The notes under the pieces are model-generated. The model did no database searches and had not been told where the DNA came from. It saw nothing but the letters and a program-made list of their open reading frames with translations. Shown here in pieces: positions 3,795-40,311 of a stretch of 64,000 nt of DNA. The position numbers were made by a program, and so were the translations under genes. Positions within the stretch are counted from its first letter, which is position 1. Every line of letters begins with the position of its first letter. Where the stretch lies: IMG/VR virus record IMGVR_UViG_3300028883_000032, positions 1 to 64,000 of that record; one strand, 5' to 3'.

Positions 3795-4211
3795 ATGAAA
3801 ACAGAACATTTACAGCAATTACTTGTGTCCGGACAGTTTATAGGATCTCACATGTGCCTTGCCAAAGACATAGGATCAAACGGAAATCTCTTTGGGGGTA
3901 ACATGCTAGCTTGGGCAGACGAAATGGGTGCTATTTTTGCTAAAAAGTTTACTGGAGAACCAAAGCTCGTAACTGTTCAAATGGACGCGGTTGAATTCAC
4001 TGTTCCAGTACATGAAGGCGAAATAGTTGATTTCTATGCCGCTAACCCCAAACCCGGCCATACCAGTTTAACGTTCACTCTTGTTGTTGCCAAACCGAAC
4101 AATGCCGACGGGGTAAGACAAATTGTATTTACAACGCGATTTGTTTTCGTGGCTGTCGGCGATGATGGGCACTCCAAACCAATTGAAAGGTTTGCAGAAA
4201 AGCGCCCATAG
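3795..4211 (+). CDS. acyl-CoA thioesterase (hotdog fold)
   Basis: NGNLFGGNMLAWADE motif, VTVQMDAVEF, GHTS, FVFVAV; 3' end overlaps the tRNA. Confidence 0.85.
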   Translation: MKTEHLQQLLVSGQFIGSHMCLAKDIGSNGNLFGGNMLAWADEMGAIFAKKFTGEPKLVTVQMDAVEFTVPVHEGEIVDFYAANPKPGHTSLTFTLVVAKPNNADGVRQIVFTTRFVFVAVGDDGHSKPIERFAEKRP

Positions 4212-4274
4212 TTCAGTGGTTAGAACAGCGGACTCTAAATCCGTGTGTCCTCGGTTCAAGTCCGAGTGGGCGCA
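4202..4274 (+). tRNA. amber suppressor tRNA (CUA anticodon)
   Basis: GCGCCCA/TGGGCGC acceptor, anticodon stem GCGGA/TCCGT with loop CT-CTA-AA, T-loop TTCAAGT. Confidence 0.85.
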
Positions 4275-4287
4275 CAAAGGAGACCTA

Positions 4288-27872: not shown

Positions 27873-29726
27873 ATGAATCTTGCCAGTCAAATTTTATCAG
27901 ACATTACGGTGCATATGAAATATGCGCGATACATCCCAGAACTTAATCGCAGGGAAACCTGGGATGAGATCGTAACACGAAATAAAAATATGCATCTTAA
28001 GAAATTTCCAGACTTGGCAGACGAAATCGAGGAAGCTTATACTTTCGTATACGACAAAAAAATACTACCATCTATGCGATCACTACAATTTGGTGGTAAA
28101 CCTATTGAAATAAGCCCTAACAGAATTTATAATTGCAGTTTTGCTCCAATTGATGATTGGCGTGTATTTCATGAAATAATGTTTCTCTTATTAGGTGGGA
28201 CGGGAGTTGGTATTTCTGTACAAAGACACCATGTGGAACAGCTACCTGAAATTGTTAAACCCAACCCACAACGTAAACGCAGATTTCTAATAGGAGATAG
28301 CATAGAGGGGTGGGCTGACGCAGTAAAGGTTTTAATGAAATCGTATTTTTTTGGTGGAAGTACTATTATATTTGATTTTGACGACATTAGACCAAAAGGG
28401 GCTAGATTGGTAACCAGTGGAGGAAAGGCGCCAGGACCACAACCTCTAAAAGAGTGCTTGGTTAAAATAAGAGGCATTCTTGATGAAAAAAATGCTGGGG
28501 ATCAATTAAAACCAATTGAAGCATATGATATAGTTTGTCATATTGCAGACGCCGTATTAGCTGGAGGGATACGCAGAGCAGCATTAATAACACTATTTAG
28601 TGCAACTGATATCGAAATGCTTACAGCTAAAAGTGGTAACTGGAGTGAAAGAAATCCACAAAGAGCCAGATCAAATAATTCCGCAGTATTACTGAGGAGT
28701 TTAATTACTAAAAAATTCTTTGATGCAGTTTGGGACCGTATCATACATAGTGGTTCTGGGGAACCCGGAGTATATTTTACAAACGATAAAGAATGGGGAG
28801 CAAATCCTTGTGTAGAAATAGGTCTGAGGCCTTTTCAGTTTTGTAACTTAGTAACTATAAATTCTAGTAGCTTAGAGTCACAAATTGATTTTAATGACAG
28901 AGCAAGAGCCGCAGCATTTATTGCTACACTTCAGGCATCATATACAGATTTTCACTATCTAAGACCGGTATGGCAACGTACAACAGAAAAAGAAGCTCTA
29001 ATAGGGGTGTCGTTAACCGGAATAGCAGATAAAACAGTATACAGATTTAATAAAGAAGAAGCAGCGATAGTAGTAAAGTCCGAAAATTCAAGAACAGCAA
29101 AGCTAATCGGGATAAATACCGCCGCAAGAACCACCTGTGGTAAACCGGAAGGAACATCTTCTCTAGTCCTAGGTAGTTCTAGCGGATGGGGACGTAGGTC
29201 AGCAAAGAGGTATATCAGAAGATTAAGAATTGGTAAAAATGAAAGCTTATACCCATATTTGTTAGAAAACCACCCAGAATTGGTTGAGGATGAATATTTT
29301 TCTCCACACGACACCGCAGTAATATCAGTACCTCAAGAATCACCATGGGGAGCAATTACTGAAGAAACTGCTTTAGAGTTTATGGAGAGAATAAAAGAGG
29401 GCTATCTGACATGGGTTAAACCAGGACACAGATCTGGATTAAATACCAACAACATTTCTGCCACAGTATTCGTAAAGCCCAAGGAATGGGAATCTGTCGG
29501 TAATTGGATGTGGGAAAATAGGGAGTACTACTGTGGACTCACAGTTCTTCCTCACGACGGCGGGACTTATAAACAAATGCCATTCGAAGAATGTGACAAA
29601 GATACCTATGATAAAATGTTCTCCGTATTACAGGAAATCGATTTAACTAAAATAGTGGAACTATCTGATAATACTGACCTAAAAGGAGAAATTGCTTGTT
29701 CGGGAGGTTCATGCGAATTGGTATGA
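27873..29726 (+). CDS. nrdJ: class II (B12-dependent) ribonucleotide reductase
   Basis: RRETWDE, LPSMRSL, YNCSF, GGIRRAA, NPCVEI, KPEGTSS, C-terminal CSGGSC. Confidence 0.92.
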   Translation: MNLASQILSDITVHMKYARYIPELNRRETWDEIVTRNKNMHLKKFPDLADEIEEAYTFVYDKKILPSMRSLQFGGKPIEISPNRIYNCSFAPIDDWRVFHEIMFLLLGGTGVGISVQRHHVEQLPEIVKPNPQRKRRFLIGDSIEGWADAVKVLMKSYFFGGSTIIFDFDDIRPKGARLVTSGGKAPGPQPLKECLVKIRGILDEKNAGDQLKPIEAYDIVCHIADAVLAGGIRRAALITLFSATDIEMLTAKSGNWSERNPQRARSNNSAVLLRSLITKKFFDAVWDRIIHSGSGEPGVYFTNDKEWGANPCVEIGLRPFQFCNLVTINSSSLESQIDFNDRARAAAFIATLQASYTDFHYLRPVWQRTTEKEALIGVSLTGIADKTVYRFNKEEAAIVVKSENSRTAKLIGINTAARTTCGKPEGTSSLVLGSSSGWGRRSAKRYIRRLRIGKNESLYPYLLENHPELVEDEYFSPHDTAVISVPQESPWGAITEETALEFMERIKEGYLTWVKPGHRSGLNTNNISATVFVKPKEWESVGNWMWENREYYCGLTVLPHDGGTYKQMPFEECDKDTYDKMFSVLQEIDLTKIVELSDNTDLKGEIACSGGSCELV

Positions 29727-30055: not shown

Positions 30056-30445
30056 ATGACAGACATACTGAAACAGCAAGTTGGGGGTAGAACTAAATTT
30101 TTAGAAGTGGTTGATGTACAGATTAACAAGGAAACGTCAAGGGAAGGCGTGGAAGGTGAAAAAGCTGCGTTAATCTGCAATTTTAATGGAACCCATAGAT
30201 TCAAGGTAGATGAAATGTTGTTACATGATAGAAATGGGAATCTTCATGCAACAGGTTTATGGGTAAACACAAACGCAGACGGAAGCCACAAAGATACATC
30301 AGCTATCGCAAGAATACTGCGATACTACGGCGCTCCTACACTAGAGGATTTAGTCGGCAAAACAGTTAGGACACTGCCCAAAAAAAGCAATTACCTGGCT
30401 CTTGCCGCAAACGATGAAGTAACAGAAGAAGCCTTACCTTGGTAA
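30056..30445 (+). CDS. hypothetical protein, possible ssDNA-binding protein
   Basis: Beta-rich body with acidic tail ending EEALPW, reminiscent of SSB tails. Confidence 0.4.
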   Translation: MTDILKQQVGGRTKFLEVVDVQINKETSREGVEGEKAALICNFNGTHRFKVDEMLLHDRNGNLHATGLWVNTNADGSHKDTSAIARILRYYGAPTLEDLVGKTVRTLPKKSNYLALAANDEVTEEALPW

Positions 30446-30475: not shown

Positions 30476-32785
30476 ATGTCGACTTATGACGTTAATTTTA
30501 GAATACTAAAGCTAAGAAACGAATTAAACGGACTCGGATTATCAAAAAACGCACTTGATCAAACACTTTACAATTGGGTCCAATTTAACAATAAAATAGC
30601 AAACTATTCGTTAAAATTCGGCGGATTGACTCTTATTAAAAAATTGGAATTACCACAGCAGGCTCCAGTATTTAAGAACCTATCCATAGCTTTAAAATGG
30701 GAGACACCGACAGCATTATATTCAGCTGACAGTGCCCAAGATGTAAATATATACATTTTATCAGATAGCTCTAACTTTGGTATCATCCCCACCAACAAAA
30801 TACTAATTATTCCGCCCAAACGAGATTATCACTTTTATAGTCTAACTGAGGCTGTTACAGTTGATGAGGAAAACATTGAAGAGGGGTTTCTTCAGGTTGT
30901 AGATTTTATTAATGGTATTAAAGATGATCTGCTAATTCCTTACAACATGACAAACCTGCTACCAAGCAAAGTACAAACTGAAGTAAGTTTAAGAAAGCAT
31001 TATTACGAAAACGGCCTACCCTTGGTAGACTTTAATAAGATGTGTGAGTATAGTAAAGAGCAACGAGATGAAATTGTAAACAAATGGTGTGAGCTTACTC
31101 TTCATTCCACATTTGAAAAAGCTTTTCCGAATGTATACTCTTACTACAATGATATCAAAAACTATAAATACGAAAACCCAATGTATGGAAGAATAGTAGA
31201 CGTTGCCGAACACAAAGATAATGGTGACAGATACTATATTATCGCTCTCCCAGAAAGAAAGAAGTTGGGGTTGGAAAAAATAGTAATAGAGGGAGTAAAG
31301 AATCTAAAACTAACTTCCGGTAAGATAACATCAAAATCGGAATACTGGCCATACATTGATGTTGGTAGGTATTTGTATTATCGGGTGCCTGAGATAGTAA
31401 TTAACCGTATAAAAGGAGACAGTCCTGGGGATAGGGCCATTAGGACCTATTATTACCATAACGATTATTATAGGACTGGTACACGAGACCCCTTATCAGA
31501 GATTTGGGGGATGTTCATAGACGAAAACCCCCTTCTACCTCAAAACCCAATACCTTTACAAAATCATTTAAATGACGATCACAGAAGAGTACAGGAACAA
31601 AATTTTGTAACCTTGCTAGATAATAGGCAGGTTAAAAGATTAGTTAAACAGCATGAGCAAATTCAGGATCGGCTAAAAAAAGAAGAAAAGCTGGAAAAGC
31701 TTTTAAAAACAAAGTGGGAACATAAATTTGAAATACTCAACGAAGACCCGTCGGCTTCCATACAATTAGATGACATAATATTCACAGGTAAAAGGGCGAT
31801 ATTTAGACCGCCAAACGTAGATGACCCTGAGCAGCCTATTGAATGTTCTGCCATAAAAGTAACCGACGTATTAAGAAGTCTTCTTTCTAAGCATTCTCCT
31901 GATCAAATATCGTTTCTTATGTATTTAGAGAATCTTTCTGCACATATTATTAAAAAAGTAGTAGAAGAGGGTAAAACTAATAATGTTACGGGAGTAATAG
32001 GAAACATTTCCTATAAATTACATTTTACCGAGACAGAAACAAAAACTGGCAGTTGCATGAGAAGGTACTTTATAAATGGGTATCGTGTAAACAAAGATGA
32101 AATGGCTCAAATACTAGATGCAGGGCTTTGTTTCAGAAGTACTCCAGAGTTTAATTCTTGGTTAAAAACCGTATCTAGATATTCGTTAAGAATACACGGA
32201 TTGATACAAAGAGGACTTGAGGCATCAGTTACGGATTCTTTAGCCTTTGACAACAACAAAAAATTCAATATAAAACTAACCTTGGAAAGACACGGTAGTA
32301 GGAATTATATTAAAAATGAAACCGATCTTTTTCAGATTCACGATATAAATAGGTTAGAAACAATCCAACGAGCGCGTCAGATGGATCATATAATATCCAT
32401 ACTTACCGATCCAAAAATATCAGATATTGGATACGAACATGTTACAAAAATACTCAAGGATGCCAGAAAGTACTACGAAGATGCTATTGAAAAAAGTCAA
32501 GCACTGCTTAATAAAACAATAGAGAAATATGGAGTTGTTAAAGATACAAAAAATGGCATGAATGGGTATGTAGTACAAGGAAAATTAAGATCGTATTTCA
32601 TAGAGCACAGTAGCAACGCAACCGTTTATTCATTGCCTAAAATGAGGCCTCTTTGCATAGTTGAAAAAACAGGCCACGGCAGAGATCCAAATGACCAAGT
32701 TGGCATGGATAAAATATATAATAGAATAATGATGCTGCGAAATGACCATCTTGTATTAGATAAAGTTCACACTTTAAACTTTTAA
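30476..32785 (+). CDS. large hypothetical protein heading the Ubl/JAB/E1 module 1
   Basis: 769 aa; coiled-coil segments; C-terminal VQGKLRSY.I..LCIV..D..ND domain with a single Cys. Confidence 0.7.
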   Translation: MSTYDVNFRILKLRNELNGLGLSKNALDQTLYNWVQFNNKIANYSLKFGGLTLIKKLELPQQAPVFKNLSIALKWETPTALYSADSAQDVNIYILSDSSNFGIIPTNKILIIPPKRDYHFYSLTEAVTVDEENIEEGFLQVVDFINGIKDDLLIPYNMTNLLPSKVQTEVSLRKHYYENGLPLVDFNKMCEYSKEQRDEIVNKWCELTLHSTFEKAFPNVYSYYNDIKNYKYENPMYGRIVDVAEHKDNGDRYYIIALPERKKLGLEKIVIEGVKNLKLTSGKITSKSEYWPYIDVGRYLYYRVPEIVINRIKGDSPGDRAIRTYYYHNDYYRTGTRDPLSEIWGMFIDENPLLPQNPIPLQNHLNDDHRRVQEQNFVTLLDNRQVKRLVKQHEQIQDRLKKEEKLEKLLKTKWEHKFEILNEDPSASIQLDDIIFTGKRAIFRPPNVDDPEQPIECSAIKVTDVLRSLLSKHSPDQISFLMYLENLSAHIIKKVVEEGKTNNVTGVIGNISYKLHFTETETKTGSCMRRYFINGYRVNKDEMAQILDAGLCFRSTPEFNSWLKTVSRYSLRIHGLIQRGLEASVTDSLAFDNNKKFNIKLTLERHGSRNYIKNETDLFQIHDINRLETIQRARQMDHIISILTDPKISDIGYEHVTKILKDARKYYEDAIEKSQALLNKTIEKYGVVKDTKNGMNGYVVQGKLRSYFIEHSSNATVYSLPKMRPLCIVEKTGHGRDPNDQVGMDKIYNRIMMLRNDHLVLDKVHTLNF

Positions 32786-32797
32786 CCATTATTAGTA

Positions 32798-33619
32798 ATG
32801 TACAAACACGACGAACCACAGAAAATCAAATTTAGTGTTGTATCCGTAAATGGGGACGATGAATTTGAAATGTTTCCAGCGGATGCTTTGGAAGAAATGA
32901 AACGTCTAGTAAATAACCATGGAAAATGGTTATATGAAGACGGTGACATAGTAAATGTAATGGATCTTACTCCTGGAGATCTAAACCCGAATAGAGATTA
33001 CGAACTTGGAAATCTGTTAAAGGGCGGTGTAGCCATAGATGAATCATGTCGGGAGACAGAAAGCGATGGGTGCTGTTGTGAACCAGAAGGTCGCTGTGAT
33101 GAGACTTCAAAACAATTAGAACTTGGAGATCCACAAAAGTATTTTTACTCCACACAACTTAATACAGTGGATAATCAGGAATTTGATTTTATGATCTGGG
33201 TCAATGATGAAAAGAAAGAAATTACTGGCCAACTACGTAAGGATCGCGGAAGATTTTATGTAGCTAATAGAGACGACATCGCAGAGATACTATATTCTGT
33301 ACTACACAATCTGAGTGTTGTGGAGACTCGAAAAATAGCAGAACCATTGAACGTGCCGTCATATGAATTTCAATTCCGTAATACTCGTACACGTATTGCT
33401 GAAGGATACAACTTCTTTTTTGATGTTTCTGGTGATCCAATGATAACCTTAAACTACGACATTAAAGATAACATACTGACCGTTGGGATTAATAACAACT
33501 TAAGGTTTAGAGCCATGAAGCATCAACGAGAACTAAAAGCTTTTGTTGGTAAGCAAATGGTAGCATTCGGACAACAGTATGTACAGGACATGGCGAAGCT
33601 AACAGGCCTTCGCGGCTAA
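32798..33619 (+). CDS. putative ubiquitin-like (beta-grasp) domain ending in GG, fused to C-terminal domain
   Basis: 77-aa N-terminal unit ending ELGNLLKGG, Cys-rich acidic linker, ~190-aa C-domain; adjacent to JAB and E1. Confidence 0.55.
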   Translation: MYKHDEPQKIKFSVVSVNGDDEFEMFPADALEEMKRLVNNHGKWLYEDGDIVNVMDLTPGDLNPNRDYELGNLLKGGVAIDESCRETESDGCCCEPEGRCDETSKQLELGDPQKYFYSTQLNTVDNQEFDFMIWVNDEKKEITGQLRKDRGRFYVANRDDIAEILYSVLHNLSVVETRKIAEPLNVPSYEFQFRNTRTRIAEGYNFFFDVSGDPMITLNYDIKDNILTVGINNNLRFRAMKHQRELKAFVGKQMVAFGQQYVQDMAKLTGLRG

Positions 33620-33644: not shown

Positions 33645-33679
33645 GGTGGGTTAGATTAAGCTCTAACCCACCTTTTTTT
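33645..33679 (+). terminator. rho-independent terminator
   Basis: GGTGGGTTAGA-ttaagc-TCTAACCCACC + T7. Confidence 0.75.
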
Positions 33680-33685
33680 AATGTT

Positions 33686-34117
33686 ATGAAAAGACAAATT
33701 TACATAAAAAACAACTTAATAGAGCACTTTGATGTATTAGGAAGAGCATACTACCCACAAGAAATTTGTGGCATATTAACTGGGCGAAACTTAAATGGAT
33801 TGTATACAGTACGTAATTTTCACTGGATAGATAACATCAGTAAGGAGCCCGGTAAATGGGATTTTACAATGGATCCCGAACAATATATGGATGTAGTAAG
33901 GGCCTTTATTAGTTCCAAATTCTCGGAAGTAGTGGGTATTTTTCACACTCACCCCAATGGTCCAAGTGTTCCTTCACTTATAGACACGAAGTATGCAACC
34001 CAAGCAGGAGATAAGATACCGTGGGTAATATATTCTGTAAGAGATAAACAGACTCAATCTTGGTACTATAATGGTAAAGAATTTGAACTTATGGATGTAG
34101 AGGAAATATATGAGTAA
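33686..34117 (+). CDS. JAB/MPN (Mov34) metalloprotease
   Basis: PQEICGIL..HTHPNGPSVPSLID (E..HxH..S..D). Confidence 0.92.
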   Translation: MKRQIYIKNNLIEHFDVLGRAYYPQEICGILTGRNLNGLYTVRNFHWIDNISKEPGKWDFTMDPEQYMDVVRAFISSKFSEVVGIFHTHPNGPSVPSLIDTKYATQAGDKIPWVIYSVRDKQTQSWYYNGKEFELMDVEEIYE

Positions 34118-34733
34118 AGTAAAAGTAGCTATTGTTGGTCTTGGGGGCATTGGTTCTTGGCTAGTCAACCATATTAATTGGTTGGTAAATAGGGGCCAAA
34201 TAGACACGTCATTAATTGAATTTCATGGATATGATGATGATGAAGTGGAAGACAAAAATACACGCTATCAATGTTTTGAGCCAGAAGATATATTTGACTC
34301 TAAAGCAGCTGCTCTTGAAATTAGATTCTTACCCGTTAGTGGAGAACACTGGTTTTTTGGACACGAAGAAAGAATTACAAATGTGGGAAAACAGCTTGGA
34401 GATGCAAACCTTATTATCTCGGCTGTCGATAACCTCAAGTTTAGAAAGGCTCTTTTTGAGTTCTGCTTGGATAAAGAGATCCACTGGTTTGATTTTCGTT
34501 CAGAAGGACGAGCTATAATGGCTCTAACCAAACACCCCTCCAACAATGTTGAAAAGCTTGAAATGTTTACTGCTGGAGATCAAGAAGAGAACGGATCATG
34601 TCAATTAGCAGCCGATTTGGAAAAAGGTTTAGTGCAACTTGGCAATCAAATTATTGCTCAAATAGGGGCTCAATACCTGCTAAACTGGTGGAGAGACATC
34701 CCTAATCCAGCACAATTTATAAGGAAGTTTTAA
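34110..34733 (+). CDS. ThiF/E1-like adenylating enzyme
   Basis: GLGGIGSW, DDDEVEDKNTRYQ, K, AVDNLKFR, D.RSEG, candidate catalytic Cys GSCQ. Confidence 0.9.
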   Translation: MSKVKVAIVGLGGIGSWLVNHINWLVNRGQIDTSLIEFHGYDDDEVEDKNTRYQCFEPEDIFDSKAAALEIRFLPVSGEHWFFGHEERITNVGKQLGDANLIISAVDNLKFRKALFEFCLDKEIHWFDFRSEGRAIMALTKHPSNNVEKLEMFTAGDQEENGSCQLAADLEKGLVQLGNQIIAQIGAQYLLNWWRDIPNPAQFIRKF

Positions 34734-36517: not shown

Positions 36518-37079
36518 TGGCAGACTTCCCCCATTAATTTACTACCAAAAAGGAGTATGATTATGACTAATCTACCAGTAGAAAAATGGGGATTTGATGA
36601 CATTTTTGCATCATTCGGTGGTTTTTTCGATAGTATGTTTAAACCCAGTAGTCTCGTTAGACAGGGGTTTTGTAAAACTCCAGACCAGTCTTTTCCTAAA
36701 TTTGATTTGAACTACCTTACAAATCAGAACGGAGACAATACAGGTGTAGTAATGCATTGTACAGTGCCAGGATGGGATAATGGTGGGCTGTCAGTGAAAG
36801 TTGAGGAAATTAACAGTAACATAGGAGTACTTGTTGTTTCCGGGGATAAACAAAATCGGCAGGAAGGTGAAAAAGCACAATTTAGCGGAATAAAACGAAG
36901 TAAGTTCCGTCGCTTCTTTGTGCTAAAACCTCTTGAAAAATATAATTTAGATGCGTTAGTAGCAAAATTAGAAAAAGGCATTTTAACAATAGAACTACCG
37001 TATAATGCGGAGTTTGATGTTGAGCAGGAAATAAAAGTTCGTAACATAGAAATCAATTAAATTGTGGGGAAGTCTGCCA
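36518..37079. repeat. 14-bp inverted repeat pair flanking the Hsp20 gene
   Basis: TGGCAGACTTCCCC at 36518-36531; GGGGAAGTCTGCCA at 37066-37079. Confidence 0.85.
36557..37060 (+). CDS. small heat shock protein Hsp20
   Basis: FP.FDL, VPGW, SGIKRSKFRRFF, AKLEKGILTIEL, C-terminal IEI. Confidence 0.85.
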   Translation: MIMTNLPVEKWGFDDIFASFGGFFDSMFKPSSLVRQGFCKTPDQSFPKFDLNYLTNQNGDNTGVVMHCTVPGWDNGGLSVKVEEINSNIGVLVVSGDKQNRQEGEKAQFSGIKRSKFRRFFVLKPLEKYNLDALVAKLEKGILTIELPYNAEFDVEQEIKVRNIEIN

Positions 37080-38058: not shown

Positions 38059-38856
38059 ATGCAGCGGTTTCCCAGAATGAAAGGAAATAACATAATGTTA
38101 TTAAACAGCCATGGTAGTGAGGTAGCACGCGTTTCAATAGAGAGAAACGGTGATCCTCTACGAGAGACTGCTGTAGGCAGTCAAAAATTAGTACATGTCC
38201 CTGATGGGGCAGAGTATGGTATTATGATTAAGAATCTAAACTACTCACAGATTCTTGCGGATGTGTGGATGGATGGCATCAAACTAACCTCCGAAAACCA
38301 ACTTTTACTTGATGGGTATCAAACGCTTCATTTGGAGCGGTTTCTTGATACAGACCGAAAGTTTAAGTTTGTACGATATGAGGGCAGTGGACAAGAAAAC
38401 AGCGTAGAAGAAAGAAACGCTGGAATAATTAGAGTGCGAATTTGGCACAATGTTGGGTATAGGCCAAAGCCATTTATTACTCAACCAACAATGTGGTGGC
38501 AAAACTATTCCTATCCAAGCATGTTCGCAAACCCAGCTCCGTATTCACAACAGTGCCGTAGTTCTTTCAATATGGAAATTGGAAACCAAAGTGTAATGTG
38601 TTGTTCTGATGCTAACTTGGTTTCAAGGTCGATTGGAGAGGAAGAAATAGGAACAACAGTGGAAGGCAGCAAATCTGATCAATCATTCCATGAGGTAACT
38701 ACTACTCAAAGGTTTCCTTATTGGGAAGAAATTATATTTAAGCTGGTTGTAGCAGACGAGCCAACTGCTGTTGCCCATAATTCAAAATTCTGCCCCAAGT
38801 GTGGAACTCGTAACAAAAATTACTCTTACTGTCCTGAATGTGGACAAAAGCTGTAA
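38059..38856 (+). CDS. hypothetical protein with C-terminal double zinc ribbon
   Basis: LERFLD..RKFKF core; CPKCG..CPECG. Confidence 0.75.
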   Translation: MQRFPRMKGNNIMLLNSHGSEVARVSIERNGDPLRETAVGSQKLVHVPDGAEYGIMIKNLNYSQILADVWMDGIKLTSENQLLLDGYQTLHLERFLDTDRKFKFVRYEGSGQENSVEERNAGIIRVRIWHNVGYRPKPFITQPTMWWQNYSYPSMFANPAPYSQQCRSSFNMEIGNQSVMCCSDANLVSRSIGEEEIGTTVEGSKSDQSFHEVTTTQRFPYWEEIIFKLVVADEPTAVAHNSKFCPKCGTRNKNYSYCPECGQKL

Positions 38857-38877
38857 AGACACGAAAGCAAACAACAC

Positions 38878-38903
38878 GGGGCTCGAAATCGGGCCCCTTT
38901 TTT
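38878..38903 (+). terminator. rho-independent terminator
   Basis: GGGGCTCG-aaat-CGGGCCCC + T run. Confidence 0.75.
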
Positions 38904-38920
38904 ATTATTTTGGAGTTATT

Positions 38921-39629
38921 ATGCTCGACCCGTTAGGTGATAGAATGAAATCTTACGAACGTGTAACTAGTTCGGTGATTGTTCCCAGAACCCCGGTTAT
39001 CTTAAGGCTTGATGGGAGATCGTTTCATACTTTTACAAAAAAAACTTGATAAACCATTTGACGAGCGAATGAGACAAGCGATGTATGCAGCAATGGAATC
39101 GCTAATGTCTAGTATATCGGGAGCCGAAATTGGATTCACACAATCCGACGAAATAAGTATTTTTGTAAAAACTTATAATAAGTTTGAAACACAAGCTTGG
39201 CATGGTGGAAAAATACAAAAAATGATATCTTCTGCTGCAAGTATTGCAACAGCGTCTTTTATACAATACTTGAGTATGTTTGAAGCCCTTCAAAAACACG
39301 CATTTACAGCAACTTTTGATTGTCGTATATTCAACTTACCATTGGAGGAAGTCGCCAATTACTTCCTATGGAGAGGAAAAGATTGTTTTCGTAACGCAGT
39401 TATGGCTTACTATTTATCACTCAACTCGCATAAATCTGCGCAAAATAAAAGCACTTCAGAACTATTGGAGTTAATTCCAAAACACAACTGGAATACTGTT
39501 GCAGATGAGTCAAAATTTGGTATTTTACTATTTAAAGACAGTGATACAACTAAACGTTCTTACTCATGCCCGATAGGAGACATGTTAAAGAACGTAAACG
39601 ATGTAGTAAATCACAGAGAAGACCAATAG
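38921..39629 (+). pseudogene. tRNA-His guanylyltransferase Thg1-like, frameshifted at an A8 run (39037-39044)
   Basis: LGDRMKSYE..ILRLDGRSFHTFT in one frame continues KKLDKPFD..TQSDEIS..FDCR..NYFLWR in the next; A7 would restore the frame. Confidence 0.85.
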
Positions 39630-40233: not shown

Positions 40234-40311
40234 GCTAGTGTAGCTCAGTTTGGAAAGAGCGCTCGACTGTGGATCGAGAGGTCATGGGTTCGACCCCCAT
40301 CGCTAGTTCCA
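40234..40311 (+). tRNA. tRNA-His(GUG), no encoded G-1, U73
   Basis: GCTAGTG/CGCTAGT-T-CCA, loop CT-GTG-GA; preceding base is T. Confidence 0.9.

What the first reader, a model, noticed from the sequence alone, without database searches (positions are those of the whole stretch)
32798..33619. Ubl-GG precursor fusion that JAB could split into two products
Seen: GG at residues 76-77 is followed by an acidic Cys-rich linker (CRETESDGCCCEPEGRC) and a ~190-aa domain ending LTGLRG. A terminator separates this gene from JAB/E1, which suggests higher expression. Inference: like eukaryotic ubiquitin fusions, JAB cleavage after GG would free a conjugatable Ubl and a cargo domain; the C-terminal RG end could also be an E1 substrate.
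Basis: inference. Interest (0 to 1): 0.65.

Follow-up and report, generated by a model that had tools for sequence, protein, structure and literature searches.

The report
Phage ubiquitin-like precursor with JAB and E1
A large marine-sediment phage makes a small ubiquitin-like protein joined to an extra domain of unknown role, next to the enzymes that would cut it free and activate it; the best evidence is that related phages make the same small protein ending exactly at the predicted cut site.

Summary
ORF 32798-33619 (273 aa) has Gly76-Gly77, then an acidic linker holding all five cysteines, then a folded domain of about 155 aa. A strong terminator-like hairpin (33645-33672 plus T7) follows, then a JAB peptidase and a 207-aa ThiF-type E1.

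An exhaustive HMMER search found 27 relatives. Gly77 is invariant in all 28 sequences and Gly76 in 27. About half are fusions carrying the same C-terminal domain. The rest are 69-88 aa proteins that end at GG, at GG plus one residue (N/K/Q), or at GG plus 13.

An AlphaFold model built on the family alignment (pLDDT 85) gives an N-terminal beta-grasp. GG sits on a disordered tail. The C-domain matches no known fold.

The gene lies in a conserved phage cassette: a ~130-aa protein, a ~700-aa protein, the Ubl with or without the C-domain, JAB, then E1. No E2 was found. The hairpin after the Ubl gene recurs in 9 of 11 loci and at no other junction.

JAB processing after GG is therefore well supported by comparison but not shown biochemically. 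Type I Bub (BubAB cut by the BubCD JAB domain) is an experimental precedent. What the cassette modifies is unknown.

The parts
30056..30445 (+). Conserved ~130-aa cassette protein of unknown function; first gene of the conserved core.
   Evidence: Homologues lie at the same position in L009, L011-L013, L016-L018, L020 and L021. Alignment A7. No Pfam or PDB match.
30476..32785 (+). Conserved ~700-aa partner protein (769 aa here). Its conserved C-terminal half has a weak DUF7737 signal and an invariant Cys727.
   Evidence: Lies immediately upstream of the Ubl gene in every locus examined. Directly adjacent to the E1 in the archaeal-MAG contigs L022 and L023. Pfam DUF7737 E 1.2e-3, below the cut-off. 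Invariant residues from the 13-sequence alignment.
32798..33028 (+). Ubl domain, residues 1-77: a beta-grasp with the flexible tail N-L-L-K-G76-G77. The predicted cleavage and activation site is after G77 (GG codons at 33023-33028).
   Evidence: AF2 with the family MSA gives strands 10-16, 19-25, 44-47, 50-52 and 68-71, helix 27-41, pLDDT 90-98. Foldseek and VIA matches are all Ubl/SUMO folds. Viral 78-88-aa Atlas clusters match at TM 0.74-0.77. G77 is invariant.
33029..33133 (+). Disordered acidic linker, residues 78-112. It contains the cysteine cluster C84-x7-C92-C93-C94-x5-C100 (nt 33047-33097).
   Evidence: pLDDT is about 45-53. Linker length in homologues varies from 2 to more than 100 residues. 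Cys clusters recur only in P0003 and P0004.
33134..33619 (+). C-terminal accessory ('cargo') domain, residues about 113-273, with topology (3 strands + 2 helices) x 2; includes the stop codon.
   Evidence: pLDDT 90-97. Homologous in all fusion forms: hhalign between the two fusion groups gives probability 99%, E 3e-18. Only one near-invariant residue, R243, and no catalytic-type conservation. No Pfam, PDB or Atlas match. Single copy in the genome.
33645..33679 (+). Intrinsic-terminator-like hairpin (33645-33672) plus T7 run, between the Ubl gene and JAB.
   Evidence: A hairpin at this junction recurs in 9 of 11 loci (median -18 kcal/mol) against -3 to -6.4 at the other four cassette junctions.
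33686..34117 (+). JAB/JAMM metallopeptidase (143 aa): predicted pro-Ubl processing enzyme and probably a deconjugase.
   Evidence: Pfam Prok-JAB E 3.3e-15. NCBIfam desampylase NF041370 E 2.1e-21, below its cut-off. Family profile against PDB: P. furiosus JAMM1 5LDA, E 1.4e-15. E26, H87, H89, S97 and D100 are invariant in 10 orthologues. The start at 33686 agrees with the orthologue alignment.
34110..34733 (+). Minimal E1-like adenylating enzyme (207 aa, ThiF fold), with no rhodanese, E2 or zinc-motif extensions.
   Evidence: Pfam ThiF E 1.5e-11. PRTRC_ThiF 52 bits, below the 144.75-bit cut-off. The GxGGxG motif, D42, D44, K65, D107-N108, R112 and S163-C164-Q165 are invariant in 10 orthologues. 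PDB profile hits to UBA3, ThiF, UBA5, MccB and Cap2 cover the adenylation half only.

Best explanation
The ORF encodes a pro-form of a phage-specific ubiquitin-like modifier.

Architecture:
- Residues 1-77 are a beta-grasp Ubl whose flexible tail ends in an invariant Gly-Gly.
- Residues 78-112 are a disordered acidic, Cys-rich linker.
- Residues about 113-273 are a non-enzymatic accessory domain found in roughly half of the family.

Proposed mechanism:
1. The neighbouring JAB metallopeptidase cuts after Gly77. This releases the Ubl with a free Gly-Gly end, plus the linker and C-domain as a second product.
2. The neighbouring minimal ThiF-type E1 adenylates Gly77. It probably carries the Ubl on its invariant Cys164.
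3. The Ubl is then passed, without a recognisable E2, to a target. The likeliest candidates are the always-linked ~700-aa and ~130-aa cassette proteins, or proteins they recruit.
4. The JAB is kept even where the Ubl gene already ends at GG, so it probably also removes the Ubl from conjugates.
5. A conserved hairpin or terminator after the Ubl gene lowers read-through into JAB and E1, so the modifier is made in excess over its enzymes.

Shown here: domain architecture, GG conservation, stand-alone orthologues ending at GG, intact catalytic motifs, cassette conservation and hairpin conservation.
Inferred: cleavage, adenylation, the chemistry after activation and the biological role.
For: - Family: the exhaustive phmmer search found 27 relatives, both fusions (195-331 aa) and stand-alone forms (69-84 aa).
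- GG: G77 is invariant and G76 present in 27 of 28.
- Stand-alone ends: forms end at GG (P0014, P0024, P0025, P0026, L012, L013, L014, L017, L018, L020), at GG plus one residue (P0013/L011 N, P0019 K, L016 Q, L021 N), or at GG plus 13 (P0022).
- The stops are real. TGA is followed by further in-frame stops, and a JAB start follows directly.
- Structure: beta-grasp with a disordered GG tail, pLDDT 85. Only Ubl folds are matched.
- Selection on GG in fusions: the C-domains are homologous across fusion groups (hhalign 99%, E 3e-18) but have diverged to 9-23% identity, while GG stays fixed.
- Cassette: small, big, Ubl, JAB and E1 lie in the same order in the window, L009/L010, L011-L020 and L021.
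- Active sites: the JAMM motif is invariant. E1 nucleotide-binding and Mg motifs and the SCQ cysteine are invariant.
- JAB type: the closest solved structure is the SAMP-cleaving PfJAMM1, 5LDA, E 1.4e-15.
- Hairpin: specific to the Ubl-JAB junction.
- Precedents: the JAB domain of BubCD cuts the BubAB pre-protein right after the conserved Gly (PMC11601596). JAB release of fused phage and prokaryotic Ubls was predicted in 2006 (PMC1779556).
Against: - No biochemical data exist for any member.
- The complex prediction of JAB with Ubl(1-95) gave no verdict.
- In some fusions only 2-4 residues separate GG from the first strand of the C-domain (P0008, P0011, P0023). This could hinder access by a peptidase.
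- The family matches no Pfam Ubl model.
- No E2, target or sulfur-acceptor enzyme was identified, so the step after activation is open.
- On the N-domain tree, fusions and stand-alone forms are intermixed (at least 2 changes forced). The history of gain and loss is unresolved.
Confidence: 0.68

Rival explanations
1. The fusion is never cleaved. The Ubl domain is a built-in, non-covalent docking module that tethers the C-terminal domain to the E1, JAB or 700-aa protein complex. GG is kept only because it fits their binding grooves or acts as a hinge.
For: - Very short linkers in several fusions.
- Many beta-grasp domains act as integral adaptor domains (PMC1779556).
- The complex prediction gave no verdict.
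Against: - GG is invariant while the linker and C-domain drift freely.
- Orthologues in the same cassette slot end exactly at GG, or at GG plus one residue, which only makes sense for a processed or activatable C-terminus.
- The JAB active site is intact in every cassette.
- Bub provides an experimental precedent for such cleavage.
Confidence: 0.15
2. The Ubl, once freed, is a sulfur carrier rather than a protein modifier. The E1 makes the acyl-adenylate, which is converted to a thiocarboxylate for a thiolation reaction, for example on the phage's many tRNAs or on a small molecule. The JAB acts only as a trimming or recycling enzyme, as QbsD and Mec+ do.
For: - No E2 was found, and a scan for one bacterial E2 family (Prok-E2_B) was uninformative because its control also failed.
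- The E1 scores with ThiF models: NF006395 E 3.6e-9, TIGR02356 E 1.3e-6.
- JAB trimming of residues after GG is known in sulfur-carrier operons (PMC1779556; QbsE/QbsD from my own knowledge).
- The window carries 21 tRNA genes.
Against: - No rhodanese and no PP-loop thiolase were found anywhere in the 206,856-bp genome, and the positive controls did match. Host enzymes could substitute.
- The conserved partner proteins resemble no biosynthetic enzyme.
- The JAB is retained where no trimming is needed.
- The JAB is closest to a conjugate-cleaving desampylase.
Confidence: 0.2
3. The whole 273-aa protein is the E1 substrate through its own C-terminal Gly273 (...LRG), as CD-NTases are in type II CBASS. 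The JAB would reverse that conjugation.
For: - The protein ends in Gly.
- CBASS shows that E1-type enzymes can activate the C-terminus of a non-Ubl protein (PMC11601603).
Against: - The C-terminus is not conserved. Other fusions end VNV, VNL, VNY, YNV, LAV, VER and so on.
- Stand-alone orthologues lack this end altogether.
- The last residues form the end of a long helix rather than a free tail.
Confidence: 0.03

Closest known systems
Type I Bub operons: the BubAB pre-protein is cut by the JAB domain of BubCD (Ye, Gong, Chambers and Corbett 2024, PMC11601596)
   Same: A Ubl is encoded as the N-terminal part of a fusion. An operon-encoded JAB/JAMM peptidase cuts immediately after the conserved Gly, giving an activatable Ubl plus a second protein. 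An E1 lies in the same operon.
   Different: - In Bub the C-terminal product is the E2 (BubB, Ser/His active site). Here the C-domain has no conserved catalytic residue and no UBC-like match.
- In Bub the JAB is fused to the E1; here they are separate genes.
- Bub Ubls have 2-3 beta-grasp domains; here there is one.
- Bub is bacterial and the fusion is obligatory in type I. Here the system is phage-borne and the fusion is optional.
Lambda/T1 tail assembly protein I (TAPI, gpI) with the JAB-containing TAPK (gpK) (Iyer, Burroughs and Aravind 2006, PMC1779556)
   Same: A phage-encoded Ubl with a conserved C-terminal Gly, joined by a low-complexity linker to a small C-terminal domain. A JAB peptidase was predicted to release the Ubl. 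The window's JAB scores with PHROG tail-protein JAB families.
   Different: TAPI systems have no E1, sit among tail genes, and pair the JAB with NlpC/P60. This cassette sits among nucleotide-metabolism genes and always carries an E1. The protein gives no Pfam match of any kind above E 0.1 except noise, so no tail-assembly model is hit.
Archaeal SAMP / UbaA / JAMM1 (desampylase) system
   Same: E2-independent Ubl plus ThiF-type E1 plus a small stand-alone JAMM. The window's JAB family is closest to PfJAMM1 (5LDA, E 1.4e-15) and to the NCBIfam desampylase model. From my own knowledge, HvJAMM1 also cleaves linear SAMP fusions.
   Different: The desampylase score (76 bits) is below the family cut-off (130). 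The Ubl has no ThiS/MoaD Pfam match. The E1 is much shorter, at 207 aa. The conserved 700-aa and 130-aa partners have no archaeal SAMP counterpart.
Eukaryotic ubiquitin precursors (Ub-ribosomal protein fusions; polyubiquitin with one extra C-terminal residue)
   Same: The same logic applies: the modifier is made as a GG-X fusion, or with a single capping residue, and must be processed to expose GG. That mirrors the GG plus N/K/Q forms here. Basis: textbook knowledge.
   Different: The eukaryotic processing enzymes are mostly Cys DUBs. The eukaryotic cargo is a ribosomal protein. No sequence relationship beyond the fold.
Sulfur-carrier operons with JAB (QbsE/QbsD/QbsC; CysO/Mec+/MoeZ)
   Same: Small beta-grasp protein ending in GG, with or without extra residues, that a JAB trims; adjacent E1; no E2 (PMC1779556).
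   Different: Those E1s carry a rhodanese domain, and the operons encode sulfur-acceptor enzymes. Neither is present in this phage genome.

Membership tests
Ubiquitin-like beta-grasp modifiers (Ub/ThiS/MoaD/SAMP type) | Beta-grasp fold | tested here: met
Ubiquitin-like beta-grasp modifiers (Ub/ThiS/MoaD/SAMP type) | Gly or Gly-Gly at the end of a flexible tail after the last strand | tested here: met
   G77 is invariant and G76 present in 27 of 28. The tail from residue 72 is unstructured in the model, with pLDDT below 50 from residue 75.
Ubiquitin-like beta-grasp modifiers (Ub/ThiS/MoaD/SAMP type) | Genomic linkage to an E1-like adenylating enzyme | tested here: met
   A ThiF-family gene lies two genes downstream in the window and in all 12 other full loci.
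Ubiquitin-like beta-grasp modifiers (Ub/ThiS/MoaD/SAMP type) | Sequence membership in a curated Ubl family (Pfam ThiS PF02597, ubiquitin PF00240 and similar) | tested here: not met
   No Pfam, NCBIfam, PHROG or PADLOC hit for the window protein or for the 18 fusion homologues against Pfam. It is a separate, unannotated family.
Ubiquitin-like beta-grasp modifiers (Ub/ThiS/MoaD/SAMP type) | C-terminal adenylation, thioester formation or conjugation | not testable with these tools
   Requires biochemistry.
JAB-processed Ubl pre-proteins (Type I Bub BubAB type) | Conserved Gly at the Ubl/C-domain junction and an operon-encoded JAB with an intact active site | tested here: met
   E26, H87, H89, S97 and D100 are invariant.
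JAB-processed Ubl pre-proteins (Type I Bub BubAB type) | The C-terminal moiety is an E2-like domain with a catalytic Ser/His or Cys | tested here: not met
   The C-domain has no invariant residue and only R243 near-invariant. It has no Cys in the window protein. No UBC/RWD match appears in the VIA or Foldseek lists. Caveat: the domain was not folded and searched on its own.
JAB-processed Ubl pre-proteins (Type I Bub BubAB type) | JAB fused to the E1 (BubCD) | tested here: not met
   The JAB and E1 are separate ORFs overlapping by 8 nt.
JAB-processed Ubl pre-proteins (Type I Bub BubAB type) | Cleavage after the junction Gly | not testable with these tools
   The complex prediction gave no verdict. 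Requires an assay.
Lambda-type TAPI/TAPK tail-assembly Ubl system | Tail-gene neighbourhood with a JAB + NlpC/P60 protein and no E1 | tested here: not met
   The neighbours are RNR, a phosphoesterase, a methylase-like gene and tRNAs. An E1 is present and the JAB is a 143-aa single domain.
Type II CBASS (Cap2/Cap3) | E1-E2 fusion ligase acting on the conserved C-terminus of an effector-activating enzyme | tested here: not met
   The E1 is 207 aa with only partial, weak PADLOC E1-E2 hits (E 1e-3 or weaker). The C-terminus of the 273-aa protein is not conserved.
ThiS/MoaD-type sulfur-carrier pathways | Rhodanese or persulfide donor, and a sulfur-acceptor enzyme, in the same genome or operon | tested here: not met
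   Rhodanese (PF00581) and the PP-loop family (PF01171) are absent from the 206,856-bp genome, with positive controls matching. Host enzymes are not excluded.
PRTRC (ParB-related, ThiF-related cassette) | ThiF member above the TIGR03736 cut-off, with PRTRC A-F and ParB partners | tested here: not met
   52.1 bits against a cut-off of 144.75. No PRTRC partner hits for the neighbouring proteins.
Archaeal desampylase (JAMM1) family, for the JAB partner | Score above the NF041370 cut-off; JAMM motif | tested here: inconclusive
   76.2 bits against a cut-off of 130. The closest solved structure is PfJAMM1 5LDA, E 1.4e-15. The motif is intact.

The most novel reading that the evidence does not exclude
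The five-gene cassette is a self-contained, phage-encoded protein-conjugation system that works without a recognisable E2. In this reading the universally linked ~700-aa protein is either a new kind of Ubl ligase or carrier, or the dedicated target. That protein has an invariant Cys727 in a Y-x-C-I-V-D motif, a DUF7737-like C-terminus, and sits directly next to the E1 even in archaeal-MAG contigs. The system would be used by large phages to remodel host or phage proteins, for example as counter-defence. The fused C-domain would be a co-translated, stoichiometric cargo released on activation, a prokaryotic-virus parallel to ubiquitin-ribosomal-protein fusions.
Probability: 0.25. Interest if true: 0.85.

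Novelty: new variant of a known kind. Interest (0 to 1): 0.62.

Why it matters
Ubiquitin-like conjugation in bacteria has so far been studied mainly as host defence against phages (CBASS Cap2/Cap3, Bil, Bub). This is the opposite case. Large environmental phages, and some archaeal-MAG contigs, carry their own Ubl, a JAB and a minimal E1. They also carry two conserved proteins of unknown function and no recognisable E2.

Neither the Ubl family nor its C-terminal domain is covered by Pfam, PHROGs, NCBIfam or PADLOC. My literature searches found no description of the cassette.

The family is a natural experiment, with the same Ubl made free, capped by one residue, or fused to a ~155-aa domain. 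That makes the processing hypothesis directly testable with three small proteins.

If conjugation is shown, it would reveal what a phage modifies with its own ubiquitin-like tag, and how conjugation can proceed without an E2.

Tried and rejected
- Known-phage searches: tblastn of the protein and megablast of 6 kb against 50,697 phage records gave no match.
- Word-index protein search: with the protein, with fusion alignment A3, and with the 700-aa protein's C-terminal region, it returned only self plus P0015. This is too insensitive to count as evidence of absence.
- The search for related loci: with the single Ubl or E1 protein there were no confirmed relatives. The narrower alignment A5 worked.
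- Single-sequence AF2: pLDDT 35, unusable.
- ESM Atlas: no usable hit by features. The structural rows rest on the Atlas's own poor models.
- C-domain: no match by PDB profile (best E 0.38), Pfam on 18 members, BFVD, Foldseek PDB or VIA-wide.
- 700-aa and 130-aa proteins: nothing from Pfam or PDB profiles beyond a weak DUF7737 signal.
- Complex prediction (JAB + Zn + Ubl 1-95): no verdict. Median score 0.31 against a mark of 0.32, controls at or below 0.01. Not used as evidence either way.
- Idea that the 700-aa protein's own C-terminus is the E1 substrate (MccB or CBASS style): rejected. After the conserved 'HTL' the ends vary (N, NF, G, GR, R, T, NK, QQT, YSNIN, or nothing).
- Separate C-domain gene in phages with a stand-alone Ubl: none within 8-kb flanks or in five whole records including a 94%-complete one. 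The control on the window's own genome was positive.
- Prok-E2_B scan of the genome: no hit, but the control set did not match either, so this is uninformative.
- Expression: the only sequencing run holding the locus is the probable source DNA metagenome (marine sediment). No RNA data exist.
- Alternative genetic code: a CTA-anticodon tRNA is present, but TAG ends 31 of 184 long ORFs and the target gene ends in TAA. The standard code was kept.
Full report
**1. The observation**

ORF 32798-33619 (+) runs from ATG to TAA and encodes 273 aa. It has a single GG, at residues 76-77. All five cysteines lie in the segment C84-RETESDG-C92-C93-C94-EPEGR-C100, and the protein ends ...KLTGLRG.

An 11-bp, GC-rich hairpin at 33645-33672 followed by seven T lies between this gene and the next. 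RNAfold gives -22.3 kcal/mol, z = -4.1.

The next two genes are:
- A JAB/JAMM peptidase at 33686-34117 (Pfam Prok-JAB, E 3.3e-15).
- A 207-aa ThiF-type E1 at 34110-34733 (PF00899, E 1.5e-11).

The description is correct. The window belongs to a 206,856-bp IMG/VR virus record (39.6% GC, CheckV 100%) with many tRNA genes. The only sequencing run that holds the locus is a marine-sediment metagenome.

**2. Relatives**

No curated library recognises the protein: Pfam, PHROGs, PADLOC and NCBIfam all gave nothing. Known phage genomes and the word-index search also gave nothing. That justified the exhaustive HMMER search.

The search found 27 relatives at E below 1e-3. They fall into two forms:
- Fusions of 195-331 aa.
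- Small proteins of 69-84 aa that align only to residues about 1-77.

In the joint alignment G77 is invariant and G76 is present in 27 of 28 sequences. G19 and W44 are also invariant.

The small forms end as follows:
- Exactly at GG: P0014, P0024, P0025, P0026.
- GG plus one residue: P0013 (N), P0019 (K).
- GG plus 13 residues: P0022.

A pattern scan of IMG/VR added ten loci. All carry stand-alone forms ending in GG (eight) or in GGN/GGQ (two). A Bacteroidales-MAG contig of 204 kb carries another, ending GGN. A Micrarchaeota-MAG contig carries a divergent 131-aa copy ending in GG.

The stops are genuine. In L005 the TGA after GG is followed by further in-frame stops, and a JAB-like start follows 9 nt later.

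**3. Structure**

The sequence alone folded poorly (pLDDT 35). With the 28-sequence family alignment, AlphaFold2 gave pLDDT 85:
- Residues 10-71 form a beta-grasp: two strands, a helix, two short strands and a final strand.
- Residues 72-77 (N-L-L-K-G-G) form a tail leading into a low-confidence stretch, with pLDDT below 50 at 75-87 and 101-113.
- Residues about 115-270 form a confident domain of two similar units, each with three strands and two helices.

Nothing convincing matched the C-domain; only helical-hairpin rows appeared. Because the domain could not be folded alone, 'no known fold' is provisional.

**4. The C-terminal domain**

The C-domains of the two fusion groups are homologous (hmmsearch E 1e-9 to 1e-21; hhalign probability 99%, E 3e-18). 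They share only 9-23% identity with the window's copy. Only one residue is near-invariant (R243), and no Cys, Ser or His pattern is conserved. The domain therefore does not look like an enzyme or a Bub-type E2.

The linker between GG and the domain varies from 2 to more than 100 residues. It is usually acidic. It carries cysteine clusters only in the window protein, P0003 and P0004.

Fusion proteins end in ...VNV, VNL, VNY, YNV and the like, not in Gly.

Phages with a stand-alone Ubl show no separate C-domain gene. None was found in the 8-kb flanks or in five whole records, one of them 94% complete. The same profile finds the window's own copy at E 6e-44. The domain is an optional accessory.

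On an N-domain tree, fusions and stand-alone forms are intermixed, and well-supported branches force at least two changes. The direction of gain and loss is unresolved. P0020 may be a fragment.

**5. Genomic context**

The gene is part of a conserved, co-directional cassette:
1. A small WGR-domain protein, in some loci only.
2. A ~130-aa protein (window 30056-30445).
3. A ~700-aa protein (window 30476-32785).
4. The Ubl, with or without the C-domain.
5. JAB.
6. E1.

This order holds in the window, L009/L010 (fusion P0009), the P0002, P0003 and P0013 contigs, ten IMG/VR loci and L021. Pairwise identities between the window and L009 are only 26-37%, so the linkage is old.

Active-site conservation:
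- In ten JAB orthologues E26, H87, H89, S97 and D100 (the JAMM motif) are invariant.
- The JAB family profile is closest to P. furiosus JAMM1 (5LDA, E 1.4e-15) and to the NCBIfam desampylase model, although below that model's cut-off.
- In ten E1 orthologues the GxGGxG motif, D42, D44, K65, D107-N108, R112 and S163-C164-Q165 are invariant.
- The E1 has no rhodanese, zinc-motif or E2 extension. It aligns to solved E1s only over the adenylation half.

No rhodanese or PP-loop thiolase was found in the genome. The scan for one bacterial E2 family (Prok-E2_B) also found nothing, but it was uninformative because its control did not match either.

The ~700-aa protein gives only a weak DUF7737 signal. 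It keeps an invariant Cys727 over 13 homologues. In two archaeal-MAG contigs it sits directly next to the E1, with no Ubl or JAB between. I considered its own C-terminus as an E1 substrate and rejected the idea, because the residues after the conserved 'HTL' vary.

The neighbouring genes are a B12-type RNR, a phosphoesterase, a small heat-shock protein and tRNAs. They are not tail genes.

**6. The hairpin**

A GC-rich hairpin lies within about 50 nt after the Ubl stop codon in the window, L003, L007, L008, L011-L013, L016-L018 and L020 (z = -3.1 to -6.4). The sequences differ but the position is the same.

Across 11 full loci, the best 40-nt hairpin after the Ubl gene has a median of -18.0 kcal/mol. 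The medians at the other four cassette junctions are -3.0 to -6.4. Only L009 and L014 lack it.

In the window there is no room for a promoter between the T-run and the JAB start, and none was found there.

**7. Mechanism**

The same Ubl occurs with tails of 0, 1, 13 or about 120-255 residues after an invariant GG, always beside an intact JAB and an E1. This is the classic signature of a modifier that must expose GG. Two points follow:
- The GG+1 forms require a peptidase.
- The GG-ending forms do not, yet they keep the JAB. This suggests a second role as a deconjugase, in line with its desampylase-like affinity.

I conclude, at about 0.68, that the 273-aa protein is a pro-Ubl cut after Gly77 by JAB 33686-34117 and then adenylated by the E1. 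The step after activation is open. It could be protein conjugation without a recognisable E2 (favoured) or sulfur carriage (about 0.2). The role of the released C-domain is unknown. Likely options are a C-terminal block that delays activation, or a stoichiometric co-product or adaptor.

A complex prediction for JAB with Ubl(1-95) gave no verdict, and I do not use it.

**8. Comparison with known systems**

- Type I Bub is the closest experimental parallel. The JAB domain of BubCD cuts the BubAB pre-protein immediately after the conserved Gly, releasing the Ubl and the E2 (PMC11601596).
- Iyer, Burroughs and Aravind (2006) predicted the same for lambda TAPI/TAPK and for ThiS/MoaD fusions (PMC1779556).
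- This system differs from both. It is phage-borne, the JAB and a minimal E1 are separate genes, the Ubl has one beta-grasp, the fused domain is optional and not E2-like, and there are two conserved partners of unknown function.
- It fails the defining tests for Bub, TAPI/TAPK, CBASS, PRTRC and classical sulfur-carrier operons (see the membership table).
- Full-text searches, and a look through a comparative review of jumbo phages, found no description of this cassette. That is not proof that none exists.

**9. Verdict**

The main interpretation is well supported by comparative evidence but untested biochemically, and one sub-claim (the LRG end) is rejected. I rate it a new variant of a known kind, with interest of about 0.6.

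Noticed in passing
window 38771-39049 and 39009-39629 (+): A Thg1-like tRNA-His guanylyltransferase gene is split over two overlapping reading frames. Pfam Thg1 profile positions 2-34 fall in the first ORF and 27-130 in the second. It lies close to a tRNA-His gene (40234-40311). This could be a frameshift, a sequencing error or programmed recoding.
   Followed up: partly
window 4202-4275 (+), and 20 other tRNA genes across the window: The window holds 21 tRNA genes. One has a CTA anticodon (amber-suppressor type, labelled 'Pyl' by ARAGORN). TAG still terminates 31 of 184 long ORFs in the genome, so wholesale TAG recoding is not evident.
   Followed up: partly
window 30476-32785 (+); L022:5872-8004 and L023:5830-7968: The ~700-aa cassette protein keeps an invariant Cys727 (Y-x-C-I-V-D motif) over 13 homologues. 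In Micrarchaeota and Methanoperedens MAG contigs it is directly followed by the E1, with no Ubl or JAB between. There is a weak DUF7737 signal, and a separate WGR-domain gene lies upstream in some loci, which is reminiscent of split MolR-like proteins.
   Followed up: partly
L018:8231-8510 and L020:8213-8492: An extra ORF of about 80 aa is inserted between the stand-alone Ubl gene and JAB in these two IMG/VR phages. It has no similarity to the C-domain.
   Followed up: no
L022:9750-10145: A divergent 131-aa member of the Ubl family lies on a Micrarchaeota-MAG contig. It has a long low-complexity (S/P/A/Q-rich) insertion inside the beta-grasp region and still ends in GG. It sits about 1.2 kb downstream of the E1 rather than upstream.
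   Followed up: no
window 33047-33097 (+): The cysteine cluster in the linker (C-x7-CCC-x5-C) has counterparts only in the two fusions P0003 (C-x-C-x2-C-x3-C) and P0004 (C-x-C-x4-C-x-C). It may be a metal- or redox-sensitive element near the cleavage site. It remains unexplained.
   Followed up: partly
window 36557-37060 (+) and 27873-29726 (+): The phage encodes a small heat-shock protein (HSP20, E 3.4e-9) and a B12-dependent-type ribonucleotide reductase on either side of the cassette.
   Followed up: no
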